Below, in pieces: positions 23,061 through 35,300 of a DNA stretch of 64,000 nucleotides. Within the stretch, counting starts at the first letter, position 1, and each line of letters begins with the position of its first letter. The translations under genes were made by a program, and so were the position numbers. Source of the stretch: Podarcis muralis (lineage: Eukaryota). The notes beneath the pieces were generated by a model, which saw nothing but the letters and a program-made list of their open reading frames with translations, ran no database searches and had not been told where the DNA came from. The stretch lies in the NCBI RefSeq assembly GCF_964188315.1, contig NC_135669.1:41850001-41914000 (forward strand), in the 5' to 3' direction.

Positions 23061-26000
23061 TCACAGCTTCCGAAGCTTTTGCAGGAGCATCGTTCGCAGC
23101 TCCTTGTTGGTGACGTTCTCCGCGATGGACTCCAGGAAGTGCCTCTCGTTGGCCTTCCTCAGGGCGCTGCCGAGGGCCTCGTCGGCGTCGTAGAGCATCT
23201 CGTACTGCGAGAGGATCTCCAGGGAGAGGAGGAGGAGGGGCTCGCTTGTGCCGTCGTCCGGCAGCATGGCGGCCACGTGGAGGGCGTGGCAGAAGATCTG
23301 GACGTAGACGAAGGACAGCTCTCGCGTCACGTTGCTCTTCTCCTGGGCCGGCTGCCACTGATTCCGGGCAATGTCCTTGACCGAACCCAGCAGATCGGAC
23401 ACGGCCAGGCAGTACAGCCGGGCCACGTGCCTCCACGCCTCCGCCGGCAGCCAGGTGGAGCCGCTGGCGCCGCAGAGGAACTGGAAGGCCCTCAGGAGAA
23501 GAACCGAGAACTGGAGATGGTAGGCAAACGGGCGGAAGTTCAGCAAGGGCAGGAACTGGACGTACTCCAGCGAATAAGGCACGTACATCACTTCCTGGTC
23601 TAAGAGGCTCTGAACCACGCCAACCAGCCTCCGCCACTCGCTGTGGCTGCACCAGGGGAAGACCTGGACCAGGGCCACCAGGAAGCCTTTGCTGAAGAGG
23701 TTGACCTCCTCGGGGTTGTCCACGTTGACCGTGAGCAGCGCCAGCATCTCCTCCCGCAAGGCGGCAGAGACGCAGCAGCACTCCATCCACGCCAGCAGGC
23801 CGCTGCCCGCGCCGTAGTTCGGGAGCGGACAGGACGTCCACTCGCCCTCCGGGAGCTTGCAGACCTCAAAGAGCGTGGCCGGGACCTCGTTCTTGAAGTG
23901 CTCCCCGTAGATGCTCTTCAGGCGGAGGCCGACGGTCCAGTCCAAGGCTGCCACCTTCTTATGCAACCAAGCCACCGACTGCGCCCACAGCTCGGGTGAC
24001 AGGGAGTCCTTCTGCGCCAAGAGGGCGTCGCAGAGCTGAGCTAGGTTGGCGGCCACCAAGTCCTTGGCTTCCAAGGAGAGGCAGTGCTGGTCTTGCGGCT
24101 CGTGCCAGTACTGGGCAAAGCCGTCGAGGAGCTTGCAGAGGCAGAAGAGGAGAGGGAAAGGGTGGCAGCTGTGGAGCCAGCTGCCCTCCTCGGCGGGCAG
24201 CGGCACTTTCAGGACTTTGTTGAGGATCTGCAAGCACAGCTCGACGCAAGGGGAGCCCGCCTTCAGGAAAGGGAGGACGAGGGCCTGGGTCACCTCTGCC
24301 GGAGAGAGGAGAGGCCTTGCTCCGCTCGGCTGCATGAGATAAACCAAGAACTCCAGGAACTGCTCCTTCTCCTTGGGCGACGAGAGGCGGTCCCAGACGG
24401 CTTCTTTCAGGCACCCCAGCAGCAGGCTGACGGGCGCTCCCTCCGAGTCCAGAGTCTCCCGGAAGCTCAGAGCCGGGAAGGAACACAGGATCTCCGCCAA
24501 GAACTGGTGCGTCCCCAGATTGGCCACGGCTAAGTTGCTCATTTTCTTGATGGTGGCCTCCGGGTTGAGGACGACCAGCCGGGACACGGAAGCCACGGCC
24601 TTCTTCAAGCCTTCTCCGGAGGCGCTCTGGATGATCTGGTTGAAGGCCACGTTGAGGTCCTCCTGGAACCCCTCAGAGAAAGCCGGAGACACCTTAGAGA
24701 GGCCCCGCCTGCCCCAAGCAGCCAAAACGCCCCAAATCACTTTGTTCTTATCGGGCAAGGGGAGGTCCATGTAGCACTCCAGCAGGACCCTCGCCACCGT
24801 GGCTTGCTGCTCCTGCTTCCCGGAGGAGTCGGCAGACGCCAACGTCTCCAGCAATTTCGAGACCAGCTCTGGTTCCCGGAACAGGTCTTTGTTCCGAACG
24901 AGGCAAGCGACCCACTCGTCTGTGAACGCCCAGCTTTTCTCCGAAGCAAAAAGGGAGCACATCTCTTGGTGCCTGTCCATCTTCTTCTCGATGACCACCA
25001 TGGCCACCGATGGCAGGAGGTCGCCACCGGCGCTCTTGCCCCACAACTCAGGGCTCACTTTCTTCAAGAAGCCTGCGATGAGGTCACCCAGCGCCGACAT
25101 CTCCTGCGCAGCATCTCTGTTGTGGTCTTCCTGTTTGGAGCAGTCCGCCAGCTTCTTCTTGAGAGAAGCCAGGGCCTCCAGGAGCCGGTAGCTCTCGTAG
25201 CAGATCTGCTGTGGGTCGTTGAGCAGCTCCTGCAGAGCGGGGGACCACTCCTCCAGCAAGGCCCGGAGGAAGCCCACATCGACGGGCAGCGCTTCGCCCG
25301 GTGGCCTCGTGGCGTTCAGCAAGCTGATGCTCCTCTCCGCCTCTTTCACCTGCTCACTCAGTTCCTGCTTGCTGTAGCGACCATCGCAGTCGCTGCTCCA
25401 GAGTGTTACCACGGAGGAGATCTTCTCCAAATAAGCCTGGACCGGCAGCGAGTCCGCCTCGCGCTGCGCCGCGAGCGACACGGACAGCACGTCTGCCAGG
25501 TTGGCGAGAGCGTGGCATTTCATCCTGGCTGGGTTGACGTTCTCCTTGATGAGCTTCAACCCTTCGGTCAAGACCGGGAGGACGCCAGCGGCCACGGAGG
25601 AACCTAGCAAAGAGGGGGCGTCGCTCTTGAATCTCTTTGGGGGCTGCCCCACCTCGTCAGGCTCCGAGAGATATTGGTGGGACACCGAGCGGAAGAGGAG
25701 CATCAGCCTGTCCTCCTGTCCCTCCTGATGCTTCAGGATTTCCCACCAGACGTCCAAGAAGAACGAGACGTCGGCCGGGGAAGTCTCGTTGGCCACGTAC
25801 CCCACAAAGGCCTCCAGCTCCTTCCGGCAGACGTGTTCCGGCAACACCAGCAGCAGCTGGGCGAACAGCCGTGGGGCGTTGATAGCCTTGAAGAGCTCAA
25901 AGAGGACAGTGTGGTTGATCTCCGGGATCATGTTGCTGGCAGAGAAGAAGACATCTTCCTTCCACCTCTGGTTGGCGGAGACTGAGGGCGACGAGAGGAG

Positions 26001-26227
26001 AATCTTGGACCAGAGGACCACGGCGGCTTTCCGCTTCCAGGCACCGGGCTCGGGCGGGTATGACGAATGGGACGTGCAGATCTCTTCCAGGGCGTCGATG
26101 ATGGGCTTCCCCACTTGGGGCCAGTCAGACTTGGCCAACTCCGACAGTGGTTTGGGGTGGCAGATGCTGGAAGCCAGCAGGAACCCCCCGTGCAACACAC
26201 TCAGTTCTCCGCAGATGGTCACCGGCC
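23061..26227 (-). CDS. GEMIN4: GEMIN4 exon 2 (3167 nt)
   Basis: Part of the 1082-codon ORF 23061..26309 downstream of the cag acceptor at 26228-26230. Confidence 0.96.
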
Positions 26228-28082
26228 CTGTTTGAGCAAAGACAGGCATACTGAGAAGGCAAAGACCTGCATCCAGCCCTATACAGCCCACTCTGACTGG
26301 CAGCAGCACTCTTCGCTCCTGAGCAGAGACACATTGGAAGCTGCCTTATATAGGGTCACACCACTGGGTCCAAGTAGCTCAGTACTGCCCACACTGATTG
26401 GCAGCCACTCTCCAGGGCTACAGGGAGAGGCTAATTCCCAGCCCTATCTGGAGTTGCTGGAGAATGAACCTCAGATGCCCTGCTGCTGAGCCTGAGACTT
26501 TCCCACCTACTCCACGATCCTTTGAGCTGGAAGCATGGAGATTCGAACCCAAGACCCTTCTGTGACAAACAGTGTTAGTCAACAGGACCCCACCTGTACC
26601 CTTTCGACGGTCTTGATCTATTCTTGATCTATGGAAATGGCAGTAGTAAAAGTGCCACATAATAGTCGTTCTGCACTTGTATGGAATAGATTTTTCAGGA
26701 TGGCAGCATCCAGACTTTGGAACTCCCTGCCTCTTGATGTTAGACAAAGCCTTAGCTGCATTCTTTTTGCCACCTGCCAAAAACTATTTCCATTTAGGCG
26801 AGTGTTCCAGGGGGGGCATACATTTGAATCCATTTCAGCTTAACTGCCGGTTTTAATTATATTTTCAATTTTTAAAGAAACACCTTTTTTTATTTCTACC
26901 TATCATTTTAATGTATATTTTTAATGTGGGGTGAGGTTATCTTTGGTAAACGCCTTTCGAGACTTTGCTTACAGTTAAGTGGAAGACAAGTTTTCCCCAA
27001 TAAATTTAAGAAAACAGATAACGCCATGGAGCACACCTGCTGCAGAGTGTGGCGGAATTTTATTTTATCTTAAAAGGAACTAAAGGGGAAAAGGAGCACC
27101 TGAGCTCAGGCAGAGTGCCTTCTGAAAGGCAACAGGGTTGTTTTGTCTGCTTTAGAGAAGAAGGAAACTTATCAATGCTTCTGAACATGTGCAAAGTTCT
27201 TCTCCCCTCTGAAGGGCACCATCCTTTCTTCAGAAAAGCAGATCGGCAAGGAAAGAAGGATGGTAACAGTAATTCTCTTAATAACCACCATCAACTACTT
27301 TGTCATCATCTAGCTGACAATCACAACAACCCTGCCGGCAAGGCAAAGTCAGTCTTATAATCAGCCCATATTCCAGGGATGCAGTGACTTGAGCGAGAGA
27401 GACACCTGGCTTTGCTTAAGCCTCCAGCTGTTTTGGGACTACAACTCCCATCATCCCTAGCTAACAGGACCAGTGGTCAGGGATGACGGAAATTGTAGTC
27501 CCAAAACATCTGGAGGGCCGAGTTTGGCCATGCCTGGAAGGCCACTAAGTCGGCTCAGGGTTCAAACCAGAACCTTCCCTATTCATTTTGATTAATTTAA
27601 TAAAACTGCTTGATTTGTGTGTGTGTGTATACACACCCCCACACACCTACATATATACACGTGTGTGTATACACCCACCCACACACCTCAAAACAGTTCA
27701 CACACAAAAAAAGAACAATAACATTGTACGGTTAAAAGCAGCTATTTAAAATGTCTAGAAGAGAGTTAAAATAGACGATACGCTTAAAACACACGTCCAC
27801 TGGCTACACTTCTGGGTGGGTTTCCTTAAAATGTTTTTTCCCCCAGGCTCTGAAAAGAGGACAGTAGGAGGCGTGTTCAAAAGTGTGCGTGTTGCCCTCG
27901 CTAAAAGCCTGATTTCTTACAAATGAGCTCCTTGGCAGGAAAAGCCGCTTAAGAAAACCCAAGTCCTACTCAGTGCAGAATCCCCTGAAACGAACTGGGC
28001 TCCGTTCATTCCAAAGGGGTCTACTCCGAGTAGCTGGAAGCGAGAGAGGAAGGCCAGCAGCCGCCCAACTACCTAGCTCCAT
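23061..28082 (-). CDS. GEMIN4: Gem-associated protein 4 (SMN complex), 2 coding exons, 1058 aa: complement(join(23061..26227,28073..28082))
   Basis: Exon 1 ATG GAG CTA G|gtagtt spliced to aaacag|GG CCG GTG ACC gives [22 protein letters not shown]..., matching human [22 protein letters not shown]. 3177 nt total, and the same 10-nt + giant-exon structure as in mammals. Confidence 0.96.
27424..27535. mobile_element. Palindromic hAT MITE (136-bp family, left end truncated)
   Basis: Near-identical to 11560-11695. Confidence 0.8.
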
Positions 28083-28900
28083 GGCTTCGGGGCTGCCTCC
28101 TAGCCCGGCTCCGGCAGGCGAGGGGAAGGCGGCATGGCCGAGAGCGGGGCTCCTCCGCCGCCTGCCCGCGCCGGGATCCTCGACGGCGGCAGCGGCTCGG
28201 GCGCCCTCCGGGGCTCCGCAGTTGGAGACGGCGGCGGCGGCGCCGTCCATTGTGCGCTCAGGGCGCACGGCACAAAGCTTTGGAGAGGGGCGCACGGGCA
28301 GGCTCGCCAAATTGCGCCACGCCGCCGCCGCAGCAATACTGTAGCCGCTTTCCAACCGCGCGGGCGCGCTGGATCCCGGCTCCTCCTCCCGGATCTCTCG
28401 GTCCCTGGGCGGATCCCTTTCCAGCCAGCGAGACGGGGCTGCGCAAGCAGAAGCGCCGTCGGAACAGCTACCTCTGCAGGCTCCTGCGCAACACTGCACG
28501 GCGCAGGGGTCGCCGAGCCATCCTCCTGCCCGCCTACACCGGCTGGTAAAAAAAAAAGCTCCTGGATGGAGGGGTTTTTGGGGGGGGGCTCTTTCTCTTC
28601 CTCCTTCCTTACTAGGAGTAGCAAGTGCCGGGGCTCCCCGATTGCAAAGCGAGAAGGGCGCCGGGGTTTGGAAATATTGGGGCAGGAGACATTCTCCTCC
28701 AGCTCTCGACGCTTCGCACCTGCCACCTTTTAAATCGCCTCCTGGGGATAGCTTGAGGGAGGCGTCTCTGGGCGTGTGCAGAGTGCTTTCTTGCATTTCT
28801 GTCTGCATAGTGGCACTGCAGAAGCGTTTGCAAGCCAATAAAACGCATACGGGTTATAAAACGCCCCGCTGTATTTTGGGGTGAGTGGAGATTTAATCGC
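28050..28900. promoter_or_regulatory. CpG island / promoter of GEMIN4, possibly bidirectional
   Basis: CpG-dense region over exon 1 and upstream; CCAAT at 28835 and TATAAAA at 28855 on + strand; boundaries approximate. Confidence 0.7.
28073..28082 (-). CDS. GEMIN4: GEMIN4 exon 1 coding part (MEL-G, 10 nt)
   Basis: gaagccATGGAGCTAG|gtagt, strong Kozak context, phase 1 matches exon 2. Confidence 0.9.
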
Positions 28901-28938
28901 AGGCTGCCCCGGTCCCGATCCGAAACTCTAAAGGAGTG

Positions 28939-29030
28939 CATAGCTGTCAACTTTTCCCCTTTTTAAAAGGGAAATTCCCTTATTCCGAATAGGATTCCTC
29001 GCAAGAAAATGGAAAAGTTGACAGCTATGA
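28939..29030. mobile_element. Short hAT-like MITE
   Basis: 17-bp TIR catagctgtcaactttt/aaaagttgacagctatg; TSD aaggagtg/gaggagtg. Confidence 0.7.
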
Positions 29031-30004
29031 GAGGAGTGGGGAGTCTCCGGATGCTGATAGACTACAACGCCCATCATCCCTCGCTACTGGACATTGTAGT
29101 TGGGGCTCATGGGAGTTGTAGTGGCACAGCTGGAAGGCCACAGGGTTCCCTCTCCCGTTGTTCGCCTCGGGTAGTCTAGGACCATCGGCCATGCTGGTTG
29201 GCCCGACACCATCCAGACAAGCGTATCTCTCTGTAGGCTACCAATTTCTTTGAGGCATTGCAAAGAAAAAAGGCTCAACAGCTTTTCTGCCCAGATTTTC
29301 ACTTTTTGAAATATGGCAACACTGGAATTACAGCTCTGGGAAGCTGAAGCGAGGGAGCCTTTTACCTCTCTGGAACGCAGCCACCTTACAGGGGTGCTGT
29401 GTCAGAAGATAATTACTGTATAGGCGCTGCATTTTTAAATCCATGAACGGTCCTCCCACAATTCATCACTGCTCTGAGCAAAACATACACTGTTATTGTC
29501 ATCATTATATTATTACAACAACCTCACTGCTGTGATTTTTACGTCGCCTTAAACTGTCTTTAATATTGTGTTTTAATTACTGTAACCCTGGGCCGTTAAG
29601 AGTGAAGGGCAGGTTAATTAATTATTAATAATTAAATTATTATTATTATATTATTATAAATATTATTATTATTCCATAGAATGTATATCCCACTTGGTTG
29701 TAGAAATCCTCAGTTTACAAAAAGAATAAGATTACAAGTAAAAACAATTAAAGCATTCAAAACATTTCGCAACAAACTGAACACGCATCAGCATTCCAAA
29801 TATCTGGCTAGGCTTGTCTAAACAAAAATGTTTTTAGCAAGCGCCAAAAAGAGTATGGTGAAAATGCCCGCCTCGTATCACTAGGCAGGGAGTTCCAAAG
29901 TGTAAGTGCTGCCACACTAAAAGCTTGAGTTCTTACAAATGGCCGTTATGTGGTACCCGTCACAGGGCCAGTTCTGCAGATCGAAACAGCCAAGAGGGCA
30001 TATA

Positions 30005-30254
30005 CAGTCATACCTCGGGTTGAATACGCTTCGAGTTGAGCGCGTTCGAGTTGCAACCCGGTAGTAACGGAGCGCTTTACTTCCGGGTTTCGCCGCTTGC
30101 ACATGCGCAGACACTCAAAATGACGTCACGCGCATGCGCAGAAGCGGCAAAAAATGACATGCGCATACGCAGATGTGCCATCGCTAGTTACGTTTGCTTC
30201 TAGATGCGAACAGGGCTCTGGAACGGATTCCGTTTGTATCTAGAGGTACCACTG
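30005..30254. mobile_element. Tc1/mariner MITE (family D)
   Basis: TA cagtcatacctc...gaggtaccactg TA. Confidence 0.75.
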
Positions 30255-30256
30255 TA

Positions 30257-30823
30257 CAGTGGTACCTCAGGTTACATACGCTTCAGGTTACAGACTCTGC
30301 TAACCCAGAAATAGTGCTTCAGGTTAAGAACTTTGCTTCAGGATGAGAACAGAAATCGTGCAGCGGTAGCAGTGGGAGGCCTCATTAGCTAAAGTGGTGC
30401 TTCAGGTTAAGAACAGTTTCAGGTCAAGTACGGGCCTCTGGAATGAATCAAGTACAGTGGTGCCCCGCAAGACGAATGCCTCGCAAGACGGAAAACCCGC
30501 AAGACAAAAGGGTTTTCCCTTTCGGAGGTGCTTCGCAAGACGATTTTCCCTATGGGCTTGCTTCGCAAGACGGAAACGTCTTGCGAGTCTCGCCATTTCC
30601 CCCCCGCTTCCCCCCCCTTTTTCAAAGGCGCTAAGCCACTAATAGCTTTTTAGCAGCTTAGCCGCTAATCCTTTAATAGCCGCTAAATCGCTAATAGCGC
30701 TAATCCTCTTAGCCGCTAATGGGGTTGCTTCGCAAGACGAAAAAACCGCTAGACGAAGAGAATCGCGGAACGGATTATTTTCGTCTTGCGAGGCACCACT
30801 GTACTTAACCCGAGGTACCACTG
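30257..30823. mobile_element. MITE family A with a nested family B element (30455-30801)
   Basis: B has TIR cagtggtgccccgcaagacgaa/ttcgtcttgcgaggcaccactg with TA TSD, inserted at the aagta|cttaa site that is empty in the copy at 4627. Confidence 0.85.
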
Positions 30824-30846
30824 TATGGGGTAAGGTGATGCTCACC

Positions 30847-30847
<1 letters not shown>

Positions 30848-30896
<49 letters not shown>
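30848..30896. repeat. (AAT)n microsatellite
   Basis: Direct reading. Confidence 0.9.
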
Positions 30897-30897
<1 letters not shown>

Positions 30898-31015
30898 GGC
30901 TCCTTTTCCTGCCCTCTGTTTGGAACACCAGGGACAGCCCTTTCAAGCATGACTTGCACCTGATCTCGAGAAGGGCCCTGTGCACAGGTCAGAAGGAAGG
31001 TGCGCTCATGACAAC

Positions 31016-31249
31016 ATGTCACAGGCTGAGCTTGAGAAAGCCCCTGGCCTGGTCTCGCAAGTGAAAGGGTCCGTCTCCGTCATGGATCTGCTGCACAAGA
31101 GGGCCGCCCCCTGCCTGGCCAGCCACGACCTAAACTCCAAAGCGACAAGGGAGGCAGGGAGCGACCACCAAGACCTTTCGGAGGAGGAGGCCGCTGAGGA
31201 GGTCCACATCACCAGGGTGGAGGAGCTGGAGAAGAAGGACAGCAGATGA
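31016..31249 (+). CDS. DBIL5: Divergent acyl-CoA-binding protein (DBI/ACBP family), DBIL5/ELP-like, intronless, 77 aa; could be a pseudogene
   Basis: MSQAELEKAPGLVSQVKGSVS...LLHKRA...SKATREAG...HITRVEELEKKDSR aligns to ACBP/DBIL5 (MSQ.EF..A....QLKG.VS...YKQA...KAKW.AW...YI.KVEELKKK). It sits between GEMIN4 and GLOD4, the DBIL5 position. aacATG context; AATAAA at 31330. Confidence 0.75.
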   Translation: MSQAELEKAPGLVSQVKGSVSVMDLLHKRAAPCLASHDLNSKATREAGSDHQDLSEEEAAEEVHITRVEELEKKDSR

Positions 31250-31329
31250 CTGCGGAGAGGGCTGTGCGGGACCCGGCTTCCAGGTCGCTTCAGTCATCTT
31301 CCGCCCCGACGATCTCTGGCGGTTAAGGC

Positions 31330-31335
31330 AATAAA
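31330..31335 (+). terminator. Candidate polyadenylation signal of the DBIL5-like gene
   Basis: AATAAA 80 nt after the TGA. Confidence 0.55.
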
Positions 31336-31895
31336 GGGCCCCTTGAGAAGCTCTATGGTGTCACCTTGCGGTATTTTGTCGTTTCAAATTGGGAGCGGTG
31401 CACTGGGCTTAGTTTTGTGGTACAGCCCTGCTAGGGTTGGAGGACTGTACTGCCGTGGGGGTGGTGGCCTAAAAAGGAGACCAAACCTGCTCCTTAAACC
31501 TTTTCCTGATGTGCTTAAGCAGCTTAGGGAGCAGCCTTCTATAGGTCAGACACTTTCTCCATCAAGACCACTGCTGCCTGCTCTGACTGGCAGCTGCCGC
31601 CCATGTTTCAGGCAGCTCTTTCCTCATCACCTGCCGCTAATTAATCCCTTTAACCTGGAGGTGCTGAGGATCAAATTGTGGGAGCTTCTGCATGCGAGGC
31701 AGGGGCTCTGACATTTGTTTGCCGGCAACGGTCTGCTAGAATTTCTAGGTGCAGAGAATTTAGTAAAAATGCGGCACTTAAAAACATACACGCACATTTT
31801 GCAAGATAGAGTGGTATGGTCCCGACAATTTGGGAAAAGAGGGCCTGTTCTTTTAGAAAGCAGGAATGTACAGTAGGATAGAATATTTATATCTA

Positions 31896-31901
31896 TTTAT
31901 T
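31896..31901 (-). terminator. Candidate polyadenylation signal of GLOD4
   Basis: tttatt on + strand, about 350 nt past the stop. Confidence 0.5.
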
Positions 31902-32247
31902 TATATTTTGCTGGCTGAGCCGGACAGAAAAGTTCTCAAAGGGGTGTGTGCTTTGGAAACACTGGACAGGACCATGACATGCAGCGGCGTTTTGCTTTGG
32001 CGAATCATCACACCTTTGCAGGCTGCATCCGTCGCAGCCAAGAGGCCTCTCCCCGCTCCATGCACACACAAGAAAGGAACAGATTTAAGAGAGGAAGGAA
32101 GGAAACTGCAATTAATTTAATTAAAAGAGAAGGAGTTCCAAGCGATAGCAGCACTACTCATCCACGTGCACAGAAAGTATGGCCGGCGGCCTCCTTTCCC
32201 AGGTCCCCACAAAAGACACTGCCAACCAGACGATTTCCCCACCCGGG

Positions 32248-32313
32248 CTAAGCGGAAGGCTTTGGGGTGTTCCGTTTGGCAAACCATTCGTGGCTCTTGT
32301 CGGCCGCCATCGC
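32248..32313 (-). CDS. GLOD4: GLOD4 exon 9 (coding part, 66 nt)
   Basis: ctgcag|[21 protein letters not shown] (TAG). Confidence 0.95.
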   Translation of the reverse strand, partial: AMAADKSHEWFAKRNTPKPSA

Positions 32314-35300
32314 CTGCAGGAGAGTAGAGAAAAGCCGTGAGCCACATCGCGGTGGAGAGAAGCTGAGCCCTTGGATCACCTTTAATTTGGAATAAACGTT
32401 GAAAGGGGGAGACTCACCTCGTCTAAAAGCTTCCCACCGTTTGGGTCCACCTTGGAAAGCTCTCTGAAAGCCTCGTCCCCGACGAAGCAGATTTCGTGGC
32501 CGTCCTAAAGCAGGTGGAAGAGGAGGAACAGCAAGGGGGTCACCTGAAGGGAAGCAACATTTGCCACGGCGGTCGCAGTCACTACTCAAGGGAGCTGGAA
32601 ATTATTTGGGGGGGGGTATACTGTCAGTTTGCATTTCTTAGTACTGAAGGTATTGATCTGATGTGTGGAGGTCTTTCCTGTTCTGCTTAGTTCAAGTCTT
32701 CTGGAAGGTTTCTTACTACGTGAAAGAAACAGGCGGGTGGTTTCTGGTGTTTGGGTTATTCCTTCCGGGAAGCCGAGCACAGCTGGTTTAAACTGGTTCC
32801 TTATCCTTTCTTGTCAAGGTCATTTTGACTATAATAGTCAGGCCAGGAGGAGCCTGCATGTTCTCTCTGTATGTTCTGGTGTCGTGTTCTGTATGCTATA
32901 GTGTTAAGGTTTAGTCTTATTATAAGTTATTGTTAAGTTTAAGATAAGACTGCTGTATGGGACGCGGGTGGCGCTGTGGGTTAAAGCCTCAGCGCCTAGG
33001 ACTTGCCGATCGAAAGGTCGGCGGTTCGAATCCCCGCGGCGGGGTGCGCTCCCGCTGCTCGGTCCCAGCGCCTGCCAACCTAGCAGTTCGAAAGCACCCC
33101 CGGGTGCAAGTAGATAAATAGGGACCGCTTACCAGCGGGAAGGTAAACGGCGTTTCCGTGTGCGGCTCTGGCTCGCCAGAGCAGCGATGTCACGCTGGCC
33201 ACGTGACCCGGAAGTGTCTGTGGACAGCGCTGGCCCCCGGCCTATAGAGTGAGATGGGTACACAACCCCAGAGTCTGTCAAGACTGGCCCGTACGGGCAG
33301 GGGTACCTTTACCTTTAAGACTGCTGTAACTGGATTTCTTATGGACTGTGCCAATCCTGAATGTATTGGATTTGTGACCACTGTGCTCATTTGCCTTCAG
33401 CAGCAGTAAAGCTTTGCTGGATGAAATTGCCTCTGGTTTATTTTTTGGGAACTTTGCAATGTGTCAAAATTTTCCCTCCGCATGCACTACATATACAGGA
33501 ACCCATAGAGATGGTAGGAGTCGGAAGTCCTGCATTTGGAGGTCTACACAGCTTTGTCAATCGTTGCTCCAAGAAGAGGAATTCTCTTCTCTCAGAAAGG
33601 ACCCCCTCTGCTAAACAGAGGCATTCCTTCATCTCTTGCACACAAGTAGGGAATGCTGCTTCGTGGGATCAGGGATAGGGGACCCTGTGGTCCTCAAGAT
33701 GCTGATGGACTACAACTCCCATCGCCCCTGACCACTGGCCCTGCTGCAGCCGGGGCTGATGGGAGTTGGAGTCCAACGACACCTGGCCACAGAGCCCTCG
33801 TTCCTGACCTGCACGAAAGCTGTTTTGAGGCTGCACTCACGGGATCCGCCAGGATGACCACTTGAACCGTCGCTTTCCCAGGCGTGTCCAGGCTCACGAG
33901 AGGGGTCAAGATCTTCTGGCCTTCCTCCTTCATCAAGGCTTCGATGCCGGGCAACTGGGGAGGACAAACGAAACGGGGAAAGGAAAATCAGCAGAGTGCG
34001 AATGTGTCCGTTTTGAGCGAGGGAAGAGAAGAGGAAGCCCATTTCTCTTTTGGAAAATCTTTGAGCACCTTTAATGAAAGAAATCTAGAACGTGGATGTC
34101 AAATAGTTTTTGAAGAATCCCTTCCAGTTGTGTTTAAGGTGTAGTGGTTAGAGTGAGAGACTGGGAGCTGGGAGATCAGGGTTCAGATCCTCACTTGGCC
34201 ACAAAGCTCCTTGGGTGACCTTGGGACAGTCCCTGACTCTCAGCCTGGACCTACCTGGCAGGCTTGTTGTGGGGATAAAATGGGGAGGAGGAGTATGGAC
34301 ACCGCCTTGTGCTCCTTGGAGGAAAGTTGGGATCCATATGTCATCAAATAAATAAATAAGCCAAATGAATCCATTTACAGTAGTCAAGAACTAGCTGAAT
34401 TAAGACTGTGAGAAGAGATTTAAATAAACGTTCACATTATTAGTATTAGAAAATGTGCAGAAGATAGAGAAATAATATGGTGTATTCATTGTTATTTTTA
34501 TGTTCGATGTTATTGTATAAATATGTTATTAGTAGTTTTTTTTCTTTTAGGAGGTAGCAAAGTGGGTGAAAGGAGAAAGAAATCAGAAGTTGGGGGAAGC
34601 CCAGGAGGGGAGGGAGGGAGGAACGCGTAGTAAATGTTGTGAATATGAGATGTATATAATGAATGAAAAAGGGAAATGAATTTAAAAATAAAATAAAAGA
34701 CTGTAAGAAGAAGGGGCAGCGGCCCCTCTAGCCCAGCCCCCTGTTCTTACAGTGGCCCCCCGGAGGCCCCTGTGAGGATTCTGCAAGTGGGACCTGAGCA
34801 CAAGAGAAACTCTCTCTTCTTGTGGTTTCCAAGAACTGGCATTCAGAAGCATTGGGAGGCAGAGCACAGTCATTGCGACTAGTAAACATTGGCAGCCTTT
34901 TCCTCCGTGAAATTGTCCAATCCTCTTTTGAAGCCATACCTGCCACTGGAAGAGTGAGCACCACAGCTTCACTTTGTTCTGCGTGAAGAAGGACTTTAAT
35001 GAACAGATTGGTAGCCATTCATCATTTTTATTTATGAACAGGTGTCGCATGCTTTTGATATTTCCCCACTAAGCATTTATTTCAAGCTAAAGTTGCCTTT
35101 GTCTTGTTGGGAATATCAGGAACACAAGAAGCTGCCTGATTGAAAGTCCAGGCCACTGGGCCTACCTCAGTGTTCTCTACTCTGACTGGCAGGGGCTCTG
35201 CAAGATTTCGTGCAGGAGTCTCTCCCAGCCTGACCTGGAAATGCCGCCAGGAACCGAACCCGGGACCTTCCATCTACCACTTGAGCGGCAGCCCCTTTCC

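What the first reader, a model, noticed from the sequence alone, without database searches (positions are those of the whole stretch)
31016..31249. Intact DBIL5/ELP-like acyl-CoA-binding-protein gene in a lizard, at the mammalian DBIL5 position
Seen: an intronless 77-codon ORF, MSQAELEKAPGLVSQVKGSVSVMDLLHKRAAPCLASHDLNSKATREAGSDHQDLSEEEAAEEVHITRVEELEKKDSR, with A at -3, strongly G/C-ending codons, retained CpGs and AATAAA 80 nt downstream. Known: mammalian DBIL5 (endozepine-like peptide) is a testis-expressed, intronless-CDS DBI/ACBP paralogue lying between GEMIN4 and GLOD4; it is a pseudogene (DBIL5P) in humans and is usually discussed as mammalian. Inference: this is its orthologue, so the retroposition would predate the mammal-sauropsid split. 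Against the mouse sequence as I recall it, the indels are about -5, -6 and +1 codons, all frame-preserving, which argues for selection on the reading frame.
Basis: partly seen in the sequence, partly recalled or inferred. Interest (0 to 1): 0.8.

Follow-up and report, generated by a model that had tools for sequence, protein, structure and literature searches.

The report
Decayed but transcribed lizard DBIL5 relic
The small open reading frame is the lizard counterpart of the mammalian testis gene DBIL5 at the same chromosomal position, and it is still transcribed and spliced. Its protein has lost the hallmarks of an acyl-CoA-binding protein and changes at the neutral rate, and reptile DBIL5 genes were already known.

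Summary
A 77-codon ORF lies at 31016-31249(+), with A at -3 and AATAAA 80 nt after the stop. It sits between GEMIN4(-) and GLOD4(-).

It is homologous to DBIL5/ACBD8:
- Rhineura's annotated 87-aa DBIL5, at the same position, matches it over its full length (39% identity; gaps -5, -6 and +1 codons).
- The genome-wide E-value is 8.8e-5, and hhalign gives 98%.
- The tree puts it inside the DBIL5 clade, next to Rhineura.
- Turtle and gharial have the same gene arrangement.

It is also expressed. Stranded RNA-seq shows a + strand RNA of two exons, with non-coding exon 1 about 190 bp from the GEMIN4 start codon.

"Intact ACBP gene" is not supported:
- Pfam ACBP gives no hit.
- Five of the seven acyl-CoA-contact residues are deleted or replaced.
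- AlphaFold gives pLDDT 59, against 89 for Rhineura with the same alignment.
- omega is 1.05 among three lacertid genera, against 0.145 in intact DBIL5 genes.

The ORF is open in Lacerta and Zootoca too, but neutral simulation gives that a 22% chance. The best reading is a transcribed, decaying relic; a rapidly evolving protein that no longer binds acyl-CoA is not excluded.

The amniote-wide origin was already published (Islinger 2020) and is in NCBI annotation. The new part is the state in squamates: intact in two lineages, broken in four, and undetected in a fifth.

The parts
28437..28545 (+). Non-coding exon 1 of the DBIL5-like transcript. The 5' end is approximate; the 3' end is the splice donor, followed by GT at 28546-28547.
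   Evidence: Contigs of X3 and X7 and 7 raw RNA reads of X23 continue for 102-108 nt upstream of the exon 2 boundary with letters that end in a 30-mer. That 30-mer is found once in the window, at 28515-28544. The block is conserved at 72-82% in all squamates sampled.
28546..30931 (+). GT-AG intron in the 5' UTR (2386 nt)
   Evidence: Loose ends at 30931 in three runs. The donor GT and acceptor AG are read.
30005..30823 (.). Dispersed-repeat insertion specific to this lineage, inside the intron, followed by (ATA)17 at 30847-30897
   Evidence: Absent from Lacerta agilis and Zootoca at a clean junction. More than 11,000 first-look candidates in the own genome, at 93-96% identity.
30932..31365 (+). 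Exon 2, holding the 5' UTR, the ORF and the 3' UTR. Raw-read depth falls to zero after about 31365; two contigs run on to 31419 and 31427.
   Evidence: In X23 (stranded RNA-seq) the depth is 5-9 and only first-mate-on-minus, the opposite of GLOD4, so the RNA is on the + strand.
30955..31065 (+). Block of nucleotide conservation covering the 5' UTR and the first ~16 codons. It is conserved across squamates even where the ORF is destroyed.
   Evidence: Alignment A5 and blastn.
31016..31249 (+). 77-codon ORF, a degenerate DBIL5/ACBD8 coding sequence
   Evidence: homology; no ACBP signature; omega about 1; low-confidence fold.
31330..31335 (+). AATAAA polyadenylation signal
   Evidence: It is conserved in Lacerta and Zootoca, and read depth ends 15-35 nt downstream.
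28071..28250 (-). GEMIN4 exon 1 with its start codon at 28250, head to head with exon 1 of the DBIL5-like transcript (about 190 bp apart)
   Evidence: tblastn of the Lacerta agilis GEMIN4 N-terminus, 92% identity.
23061..26309 (-). GEMIN4 main coding exon
   Evidence: 93% identical to Lacerta agilis GEMIN4; Pfam TPR_Edg1.
31877..32312 (-). GLOD4 terminal exon and 3' UTR, tail to tail with the DBIL5-like transcript
   Evidence: A joint 32312/32417 (CT..AC, that is GT..AG on the minus strand) in four runs, and a poly-T loose end at 31876. GLOD4_C Pfam hits lie at 32457-32504 and 33841-33972.

Best explanation
This is the lacertid orthologue of DBIL5 (endozepine-like peptide, ACBD8). DBIL5 is an ACBP paralogue with an intronless CDS that has lain between GEMIN4 and GLOD4 since before the mammal-sauropsid split. 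In lacertids the locus is still transcribed. A non-coding exon 1 starts about 190 bp from the GEMIN4 start codon, probably from a shared bidirectional promoter. It is spliced to exon 2, which carries the ORF and an AATAAA signal. The coding sequence has decayed. Two in-frame deletions removed half of helix A2 and the A2-A3 loop. Five of the seven acyl-CoA-contact residues are deleted or replaced in this species, one is ambiguous and only Lys33 is kept. The net charge went from about +3 to about -6. Since the lacertid stem the sequence has evolved at or near the neutral rate. The product, if it is made at all, is not an acyl-CoA-binding protein. Most likely the ORF is a relic that has not yet been hit by a stop codon, that is, a transcribed unitary pseudogene in the making. 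Its transcription may persist because the promoter region and splice sites are conserved for other reasons. Shown here: orthology, transcription, splicing, loss of the ACBP signature, and omega about 1. Inferred: lack of protein function, and the reason transcription persists.
For: Homology and orthology. tblastn with Rhineura DBIL5 gives E 5e-9 and BLASTP E 5e-17. hhalign of the lacertid trio against ACBPs gives 98.2%. The genome-wide E-value is 8.8e-5. Turtle and gharial show the same GEMIN4(-)/ACBP(+)/GLOD4(-) arrangement, and Rhineura and Hemicordylus the matching one. The tree is and the AU test.

Decay. There is no Pfam hit and no phmmer hit among 1.84 billion representatives. By alignment A1, Phe6 is Leu, Tyr29 is deleted, Tyr32 is His, Lys55 is Thr and Tyr74 is His. 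The residue list comes from PMC7057175. AlphaFold2 gives pLDDT 58.7 and pTM 0.23, against 89.3 and 0.78 for Rhineura with the same 24-sequence alignment.

Selection. A branch-model codon ML analysis gives omega 0.145 for the background, 0.69 for the lacertid stem and 1.05 for the crown. Crown=1 is not rejected (2dlnL 0.01), and crown=background is rejected (2dlnL 19.8). ORF identity between genera (89-91%) is no higher than in the flanking non-coding DNA. Both SNPs seen inside the ORF are non-synonymous. Neutral simulation keeps ATG and frame in all three genera 22% of the time.

Context. The same gene is visibly broken in Tiliqua, Elgaria, Eublepharis and Pantherophis, so loss is the common fate in squamates. 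NCBI annotates no gene here in Lacerta agilis or Zootoca.

Transcription. (stranded reads and the spliced form in three runs).
Against: The frame is open in all three lacertid genera, and every indel inside the ORF is a multiple of three. These are -15, -18 and +3 nt on the stem, +3 in Zootoca and -15 in Lacerta, whereas the flanks carry indels that are not multiples of three. If about two thirds of the stem was neutral, as omega 0.69 implies, simulated survival of ATG and frame is only 3-9% on the stem. Multiplied by the crown, that is about 2%. This hints that the ORF was kept for some time after it stopped being an ACBP. The crown omega interval is wide (about 0.47-2.7), so moderate constraint is not excluded. 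The RNA is reasonably abundant, about a fifth of the depth of the GLOD4 3' UTR in X23. SNP density looked lower in the ORF (2 in 234 nt) than in the UTRs (9 in about 254 nt), but the counts are small. Several of the indels lie in triplet repeats (GAG, TGC/TGG), which weakens the argument from the indels.
Confidence: 0.6

Rival explanations
1. The ORF encodes a functional, rapidly evolving small acidic protein. On this view it derives from DBIL5, has given up the ACBP fold and acyl-CoA binding, and is kept for a new role, for instance in male germ cells, where mammalian DBIL5 is expressed.
For: The frame and ATG are kept in three genera and all ORF indels are in frame. Strict neutrality over stem plus crown has a simulated probability of about 2%. 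The RNA is spliced, polyadenylated, on the sense strand and of moderate depth. The start codon has A at -3. An omega near 1 can be an average of positive and purifying selection, as is common for reproductive proteins (established knowledge).
Against: Crown omega is 1.05, with no excess conservation over the UTRs or the intergenic DNA. No confident fold is predicted. Two upstream ATGs lie in the exon 2 leader, one of them overlapping the start out of frame. No protein-level evidence exists, and no homologue outside lacertids shares the derived sequence.
Confidence: 0.3
2. One reading: an intact, functional acyl-CoA-binding DBIL5 protein.
For: Both ends still look like ACBP (MSQAELEKA......RVEELEKK). 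Lys33 is kept, and Lys55 and Trp56 are kept in Lacerta and Zootoca.
Against: There is no Pfam ACBP hit. Eleven core codons are deleted, including Tyr29. Phe6, Tyr32, Tyr74 and Trp59 are replaced in all three genera. The net charge is acidic. AlphaFold gives pLDDT 59 and merges helices 3 and 4 into one, where the control shows the four ACBP helices. Omega is about 1 against 0.145 in intact orthologues.
Confidence: 0.04
3. A recent, independent retrocopy of squamate DBI or ACBD7 that happened to land here, or a chance ORF without ACBP ancestry.
For: The genome does hold DBI and ACBD7 retrocopies elsewhere. Sequence alone does not formally reject placement somewhere on the DBI/ACBD7 side (p-AU 0.068).
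Against: The AU test rejects a clade with squamate DBI (p 0.0004). The ORF keeps the DBIL5-type PC.A..DL motif, not the ERPGMLDF of DBI. Position, orientation and the 5' UTR splice acceptor are shared with Rhineura and other squamates. The homology statistics are significant.
Confidence: 0.01
4. The functional unit is the RNA or the DNA, not the protein. This could be a long non-coding RNA, an alternative terminal exon used by read-through TLCD3A transcripts, or a regulatory element whose conserved core is 30955-31065.
For: Exon 1, the splice acceptor and the first ~110 nt of exon 2 are conserved in all squamates, including those with a dead ORF. The 5' flank is more conserved between lacertids (94-96%) than the ORF (89-91%). 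NCBI's TLCD3A gene ranges reach this exon in Pantherophis and Hemicordylus.
Against: No function was tested. Some of the conservation near GEMIN4 may simply be the GEMIN4 promoter. This reading is compatible with the best explanation rather than exclusive of it.
Confidence: 0.05

Closest known systems
DBIL5 / endozepine-like peptide (ELP) / ACBD8 of mammals (mouse Dbil5; human pseudogene DBIL5P)
   Same: The chromosomal position next to GEMIN4 is the same; the human order FAM57A(TLCD3A)-GEMIN4-DBIL5P is given in PMC6029155. Both have an intronless CDS of ACBP ancestry, and the ORF falls in the same clade on the tree. Like the human and some other primate copies, it is losing its function (Ivell 2000, cited in PMC7057175).
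   Different: The lacertid ORF is still open but lacks 11 core codons and most ligand-contact residues. It is 77 aa, not 87, and acidic. Tissue specificity is unknown here. The transcript starts at an upstream non-coding exon next to GEMIN4.
Sauropsid DBIL5 as already annotated: Rhineura floridana (P0128), Chrysemys, Lepidochelys and Pelodiscus 'diazepam-binding inhibitor-like 5', Gavialis 'acyl-CoA-binding protein-like', Sphenodon ACB-domain protein
   Same: Where it was checked (Rhineura, Chrysemys, Gavialis), the locus and orientation are the same. Rhineura is the nearest sequence (39-45% identity).
   Different: Those proteins are 86-89 aa, match Pfam ACBP, keep the binding residues and evolve at omega about 0.145. 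The lacertid copy does none of this.
DBI/ACBP (ACBD1) and ACBD7
   Same: They share a distant ancestry. The only PDB sequences that phmmer returns are ACBPs, weakly (E 0.32).
   Different: These genes have several exons and lie elsewhere in the genome. They are separated from all DBIL5 sequences by a 100/99 branch.
Transcribed unitary pseudogenes (a class from established knowledge)
   Same: An orthologue of a gene that is functional in relatives, at its ancestral locus, still transcribed, with neutral coding evolution.
   Different: It has no disabling stop or frameshift yet, so it does not meet the usual operational definition of a pseudogene.

Membership tests
ACBP domain family (Pfam PF00887) | Matches the family HMM above the gathering score | tested here: not met
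   hmmscan of the 77-aa and 89-aa translations at E<=10 finds no family. A six-frame scan of the whole genome with PF00887 at E<=10 finds no match on this contig.
ACBP domain family (Pfam PF00887) | Common descent with ACBPs (detectable homology) | tested here: met
   hhalign gives 98.2% and E 3e-14. BLASTP against Rhineura DBIL5 gives E 5e-17. The genome-wide E-value is 8.8e-5.
ACBP domain family (Pfam PF00887) | The acyl-CoA-contact residues Phe6, Leu26, Tyr29, Tyr32, Lys33, Lys55, Tyr74 (list from PMC7057175, Fig. S3 legend) | tested here: not met
   In alignment A1 Phe6 is Leu, Tyr29 is deleted, Tyr32 is His, Lys55 is Thr (Lys in Lacerta and Zootoca) and Tyr74 is His. Leu26 is ambiguous because it sits at the edge of a gap. 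Only Lys33 is kept.
ACBP domain family (Pfam PF00887) | Four-helix bundle | tested here: not met
   AlphaFold2 with a 24-sequence alignment gives pLDDT 58.7 and pTM 0.23, with helices 3 and 4 fused into one long helix. The Rhineura control gives 89.3 and 0.78 with four helices. This is a prediction only.
ACBP domain family (Pfam PF00887) | Binds long-chain acyl-CoA | not testable with these tools
   This needs recombinant protein and ITC or a Lipidex assay.
DBIL5 / ACBD8 orthologue group | Lies between GEMIN4 and GLOD4, on the strand opposite to both | tested here: met
   for the window. Turtle and gharial show the same layout, and Rhineura and Hemicordylus the matching one.
DBIL5 / ACBD8 orthologue group | CDS without introns | tested here: met
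   The ORF is continuous. The only intron seen in RNA is in the 5' UTR.
DBIL5 / ACBD8 orthologue group | Groups with DBIL5 and not with DBI or ACBD7 on a tree | tested here: met
   100/99 for the split and 96/89 for the pairing with Rhineura. The AU test rejects a squamate DBI clade at p 0.0004. The lacertid branch is long (1.08) and its composition deviates, so synteny carries much of the weight.
DBIL5 / ACBD8 orthologue group | Expression in post-meiotic male germ cells | not testable with these tools
   Transcription is shown, but the tissues of the runs are not given.
DBIL5 / ACBD8 orthologue group | Purifying selection on the protein, as in intact orthologues | tested here: not met
   Omega is 1.05 for the crown (interval about 0.47-2.7) and 0.69 for the stem, against 0.145 for the background. 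Crown=background is rejected with 2dlnL 19.8.

The most novel reading that the evidence does not exclude
After losing the ACBP fold, the lacertid DBIL5 descendant was retained as a new, rapidly evolving acidic micro-protein of about 77 aa. That would explain why the frame survived a long stem branch with only in-frame indels, and it would be a documented case of a lipid-binding domain turning into something else at a conserved locus.
Probability: 0.27. Interest if true: 0.55.

Novelty: new member of a known kind. Interest (0 to 1): 0.3.

Why it matters
Islinger et al. 2020 already reported ACBD8-like proteins in turtles and crocodilians, and NCBI names DBIL5 in turtles and in Rhineura.

- The gene is intact in an amphisbaenian and a cordylid, as it is in the tuatara, the sister group of squamates.
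- It is visibly broken in a skink, an anguid, a gecko and a snake.
- No ORF remnant was found in an anole.
- In lacertids it is caught in an intermediate state: transcribed, spliced and open, but no longer an ACBP and evolving neutrally.

This parallels the progressive inactivation described in primates. It makes the locus a small natural series for studying how a tissue-restricted paralogue dies while its promoter and exon structure persist. It is a useful annotation note, not a surprise for specialists.

Tried and rejected
- Pfam hmmscan of the ORF gave nothing, as did a six-frame PF00887 scan of the genome on this contig.
- phmmer against PDB gave only ACBPs, at a non-significant E of 0.32.
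- The word-index homologue search with the ORF found no candidate. Exhaustive phmmer against 1.84 billion representatives gave 0 hits. The derived lacertid sequence is therefore unannotated and has no close relatives in those collections.
- Other reading frames around the ORF hold no hidden ACBP segments, so the missing core is deleted, not frameshifted.
- The look-up of Podarcis muralis GEMIN4 was 'not on record'. I take this, together with the 93% identity to Lacerta GEMIN4, to mean that the window comes from Podarcis or a close relative. This is an inference.
- The protein atlas look-up of GEMIN4 was ambiguous, with Med23 first and GEMI4 second. One search settled it.
- The search of earlier findings returned only this same finding.
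- The idea that the 819-bp insertion upstream of the ATG had destroyed the promoter was dropped, because RNA shows that it lies inside an intron.
- Whether ORF survival alone proves selection was tested by simulation. It does not for the crown (22%) and does so only weakly for the stem (3-9%).
- I did not fold-search the window model, because its confidence is too low for matches to mean anything.

Full report
OBSERVATION

The ORF is exactly as described. Positions 31016-31249 on the + strand give 77 codons plus TGA with the stated translation. The start context is gacaacATGt, with A at -3, and AATAAA lies at 31330-31335, 80 nt after the stop.

The 1082-codon ORF at 23061-26309(-) is GEMIN4, 93% identical to Lacerta agilis GEMIN4. 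GEMIN4's first exon and ATG lie at 28250-28071(-). GLOD4_C exons lie at 32457-32504(-) and 33841-33972(-).

The best GEMIN4 match is a lacertid, and the Podarcis muralis record is withheld as 'own or very near'. The window therefore probably comes from Podarcis or a close relative; this is an inference.

IS IT AN ACBP?

- Pfam PF00887 does not hit the protein at E<=10.
- A six-frame PF00887 scan of the whole 1.52-Gb genome finds 22 ACBP pieces, none on this contig.
- Exhaustive phmmer against 1.84 billion representatives returns nothing.
- PDB returns only ACBPs, at E 0.32.
On its own, then, the ORF is not recognisable as an ACBP.

ORTHOLOGUES SETTLE THE ANCESTRY

I fetched the GEMIN4 neighbourhood from other reptiles.
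- Rhineura floridana has an 87-aa gene between GLOD4 and GEMIN4. It carries Pfam ACBP and NCBI calls it 'diazepam-binding inhibitor-like 5'.
- Hemicordylus has an intact 85-aa copy that is fused in annotation to TLCD3A.
- Chrysemys and Gavialis have an 87-aa intronless ACBP gene in the same GEMIN4(-)/ACBP(+)/GLOD4(-) layout.

Rhineura DBIL5 aligns to the window ORF over its full length at 39% identity, with gaps of -5, -6 and +1 codons.
- tblastn gives E 5e-9 and BLASTP E 5e-17.
- Searched against the whole genome, it finds 31016-31237 at E 8.8e-5.
- A profile of the three lacertid ORFs matches an ACBP profile at 98.2%.

On a 41-sequence tree, all DBIL5 sequences (sauropsid, primate and lacertid) are separated from DBI+ACBD7 by a 100/99 branch. 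The lacertid ORFs are sister to Rhineura at 96/89, as the species tree predicts. An AU test rejects a clade of the lacertid ORFs with squamate DBI (p 0.0004). Placement anywhere on the DBI/ACBD7 side is only weakly disfavoured by sequence (p 0.068), so synteny carries part of the argument. The ORF also keeps the DBIL5-type PC.A..DL motif, not the ERPGMLDF of DBI. The human order FAM57A(TLCD3A)-GEMIN4-DBIL5P matches (PMC6029155).

WHAT STATE IS IT IN?

Sequence and fold. Against intact DBIL5 the lacertid ORF lacks five codons of helix A2 (including Tyr29) and six of the A2-A3 loop. PMC7057175 lists seven major acyl-CoA-contact residues. In this species five are deleted or replaced: Phe6 is Leu, Tyr29 is deleted, Tyr32 is His, Lys55 is Thr and Tyr74 is His. 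Leu26 is ambiguous, and only Lys33 is kept. Trp59 is Gly in all three lacertids. By my count from the sequences, the net charge shifts from about +3 in Rhineura to about -6. AlphaFold2 with one and the same 24-sequence alignment gives pLDDT 58.7 and pTM 0.23 for the window ORF, with helices 3 and 4 fused. It gives 89.3 and 0.78, with the four ACBP helices, for Rhineura.

Other lacertids. The ORF is open in Lacerta agilis (76 aa) and Zootoca (78 aa), with in-frame indels. NCBI annotates no gene there.

Selection. A branch-model codon likelihood analysis that I wrote used GY-type rates, F3x4 frequencies and seven taxa.
- Omega is 0.145 for intact DBIL5 lineages, 0.69 for the lacertid stem and 1.05 for the lacertid crown.
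- One omega for all branches is rejected (2dlnL 25.1, 2 df).
- Stem=background is rejected (2dlnL 10.6).
- Crown=background is rejected (2dlnL 19.8).
- Crown=1 and stem=1 are not rejected.
- The profile intervals are about 0.47-2.7 for the crown and 0.30-2.1 for the stem.

Nucleotide identity in the ORF between genera (89-91%) is no higher than in the 5' flank (94-96%), the 3' flank (88-92%) or the surrounding intergenic DNA. Both SNPs seen inside the ORF in RNA reads are non-synonymous: 31058 C>G gives Q15E and 31135 C>A gives N40K (the codon reading is mine).

Does the open frame prove selection? Simulating neutral HKY evolution from the inferred lacertid ancestor, all three genera keep ATG and frame in 22% of replicates. 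The crown is therefore uninformative. On the stem, a neutral distance of 0.3-0.49 substitutions per site leaves the frame and ATG intact in 9-3% of replicates. Together with five indels that are all in frame, this is a real but modest argument that the ORF was kept for some time. Several of the indels lie in triplet repeats, and the locus was picked because it is open. Both points weaken that argument.

EXPRESSION

Raw reads of a stranded RNA-seq run (X23) cover 30931-31365 at depth 5-9. All have the first mate on the minus strand. GLOD4 (a minus-strand gene) shows the opposite, so the RNA is on the + strand, sense to the ORF.

Reads and contigs from three runs continue upstream of 30931 with 102-108 nt that are not adjacent in the genome. 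That sequence maps once, ending at 28544. With the shared G, exon 1 ends at 28545, followed by GT, and the acceptor is ...caccag|G at 30931/30932.

The gene therefore has a non-coding exon 1 (about 28437-28545), a 2386-nt intron and exon 2 with the whole ORF. Exon 1 starts about 190 bp from the GEMIN4 ATG on the other strand, which looks like a bidirectional promoter; this is an inference. Depth is about a fifth of the GLOD4 3' UTR. The tissues of the runs are not given.

The 819-bp insertion at 30005-30823 is absent from Lacerta and Zootoca and belongs to a very abundant repeat family. It lies inside the intron.

SQUAMATE CONTEXT

The same gene is dead in several lineages.
- Tiliqua has GTG for ATG, an in-frame stop and a deletion.
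- Elgaria has a frameshift after about 17 codons.
- Eublepharis has a stop at codon 6 and frameshifts.
- Pantherophis keeps only the first ~16 codons, without an ATG.
- Anolis sagrei has no detectable ORF remnant.

Yet exon 1, the splice acceptor and the first ~110 nt of exon 2 (window 30955-31065) remain alignable in all of them. NCBI's TLCD3A gene ranges run into this exon in Pantherophis and Hemicordylus. Some feature of the locus other than the ACBP protein is therefore conserved. That also gives a reason why transcription can outlive the protein.

COMPARISON WITH WHAT IS KNOWN

Islinger et al. 2020 (PMC7057175) named this paralogue ACBD8 and reported relatives in crocodiles and turtles. 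They inferred an origin early in amniote evolution. They also stated that no full-length sequence could be retrieved from squamates, birds, monotremes or insectivores. NCBI now names DBIL5 in turtles and Rhineura.

The squamate detail is new, and so is the intermediate state in lacertids. I could not examine birds or monotremes.

VERDICT

- Best explanation: a transcribed relic of DBIL5 that has lost the ACBP fold and acyl-CoA binding and evolves neutrally (confidence 0.6).
- Main rival: a neofunctionalised, fast-evolving micro-protein (0.3).
- Novelty: a new, degenerate member of a known kind.
- Interest: 0.3.

Noticed in passing
window 30955-31065; L028:8590-8765(-), L027:6605-6790(-), L029:6400-6580(-), L031:6880-7000(-): The 5' UTR of exon 2 plus the first ~16 codons are conserved at about 75-90% across all squamates sampled, even where the ACBP ORF is destroyed. 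The block contains AGGTCA and TGAC(A/G)ACA. Mouse ELP is reported to be regulated by CREM and GCNF (PMC2853129). A link between that and this block is speculation.
   Followed up: partly
L031 7011-27867(-), L026 8496-24511(-): NCBI's TLCD3A gene ranges in Pantherophis and Hemicordylus extend across GEMIN4 into the DBIL5 exon. The intact Hemicordylus DBIL5 protein (P0174) is named 'TLC domain-containing protein 3A isoform X3'. This is either read-through transcripts or a mis-merged model.
   Followed up: no
window 30005-30823 and 30847-30897: An 819-bp dispersed repeat with an (ATA)17 tail, inserted in the intron in this lineage only. The own genome has more than 11,000 first-look candidates, many at 93-96% identity, which points to a young and abundant retroposon family.
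   Followed up: partly
L029:6217-6462(-), L028:8300-8760(-), L027:6350-6790(-), L031:6600-7000(-): DBIL5 is pseudogenised, apparently independently, in a skink, an anguid, a gecko and a snake. No ORF remnant was found in Anolis sagrei (L030).
   Followed up: partly
own genome G000:C16:36864520-36864771(-); C1:102562955-102563212(+); C8:1932850-1933092(-): C16 holds an intact intronless 88-aa ACBD7-like ORF that groups with ACBD7 on the tree. C1 holds a DBI-like retrocopy with stops, and C8 holds one without an evident ATG.
   Followed up: partly
P0137 (Pelodiscus sinensis 'DBIL5'): It carries Y29S, Y32C, W59G and a one-residue deletion before Tyr74, so the soft-shell turtle copy may also be losing acyl-CoA binding.
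   Followed up: no
window 31877-32416: The GLOD4 3' end is at about 31877 (poly-T loose end), and its last intron is 32313-32416. The two transcripts end tail to tail, about 450-500 nt apart.
   Followed up: yes
window 30950-31062: There are two upstream ATGs in the exon 2 leader. One opens a 4-codon uORF at about 30948-30962. The other, at 31008, is out of frame, overlaps the main start and runs 18 codons. It is present in the three lacertids, Elgaria and Pantherophis, but not in Rhineura.
   Followed up: partly
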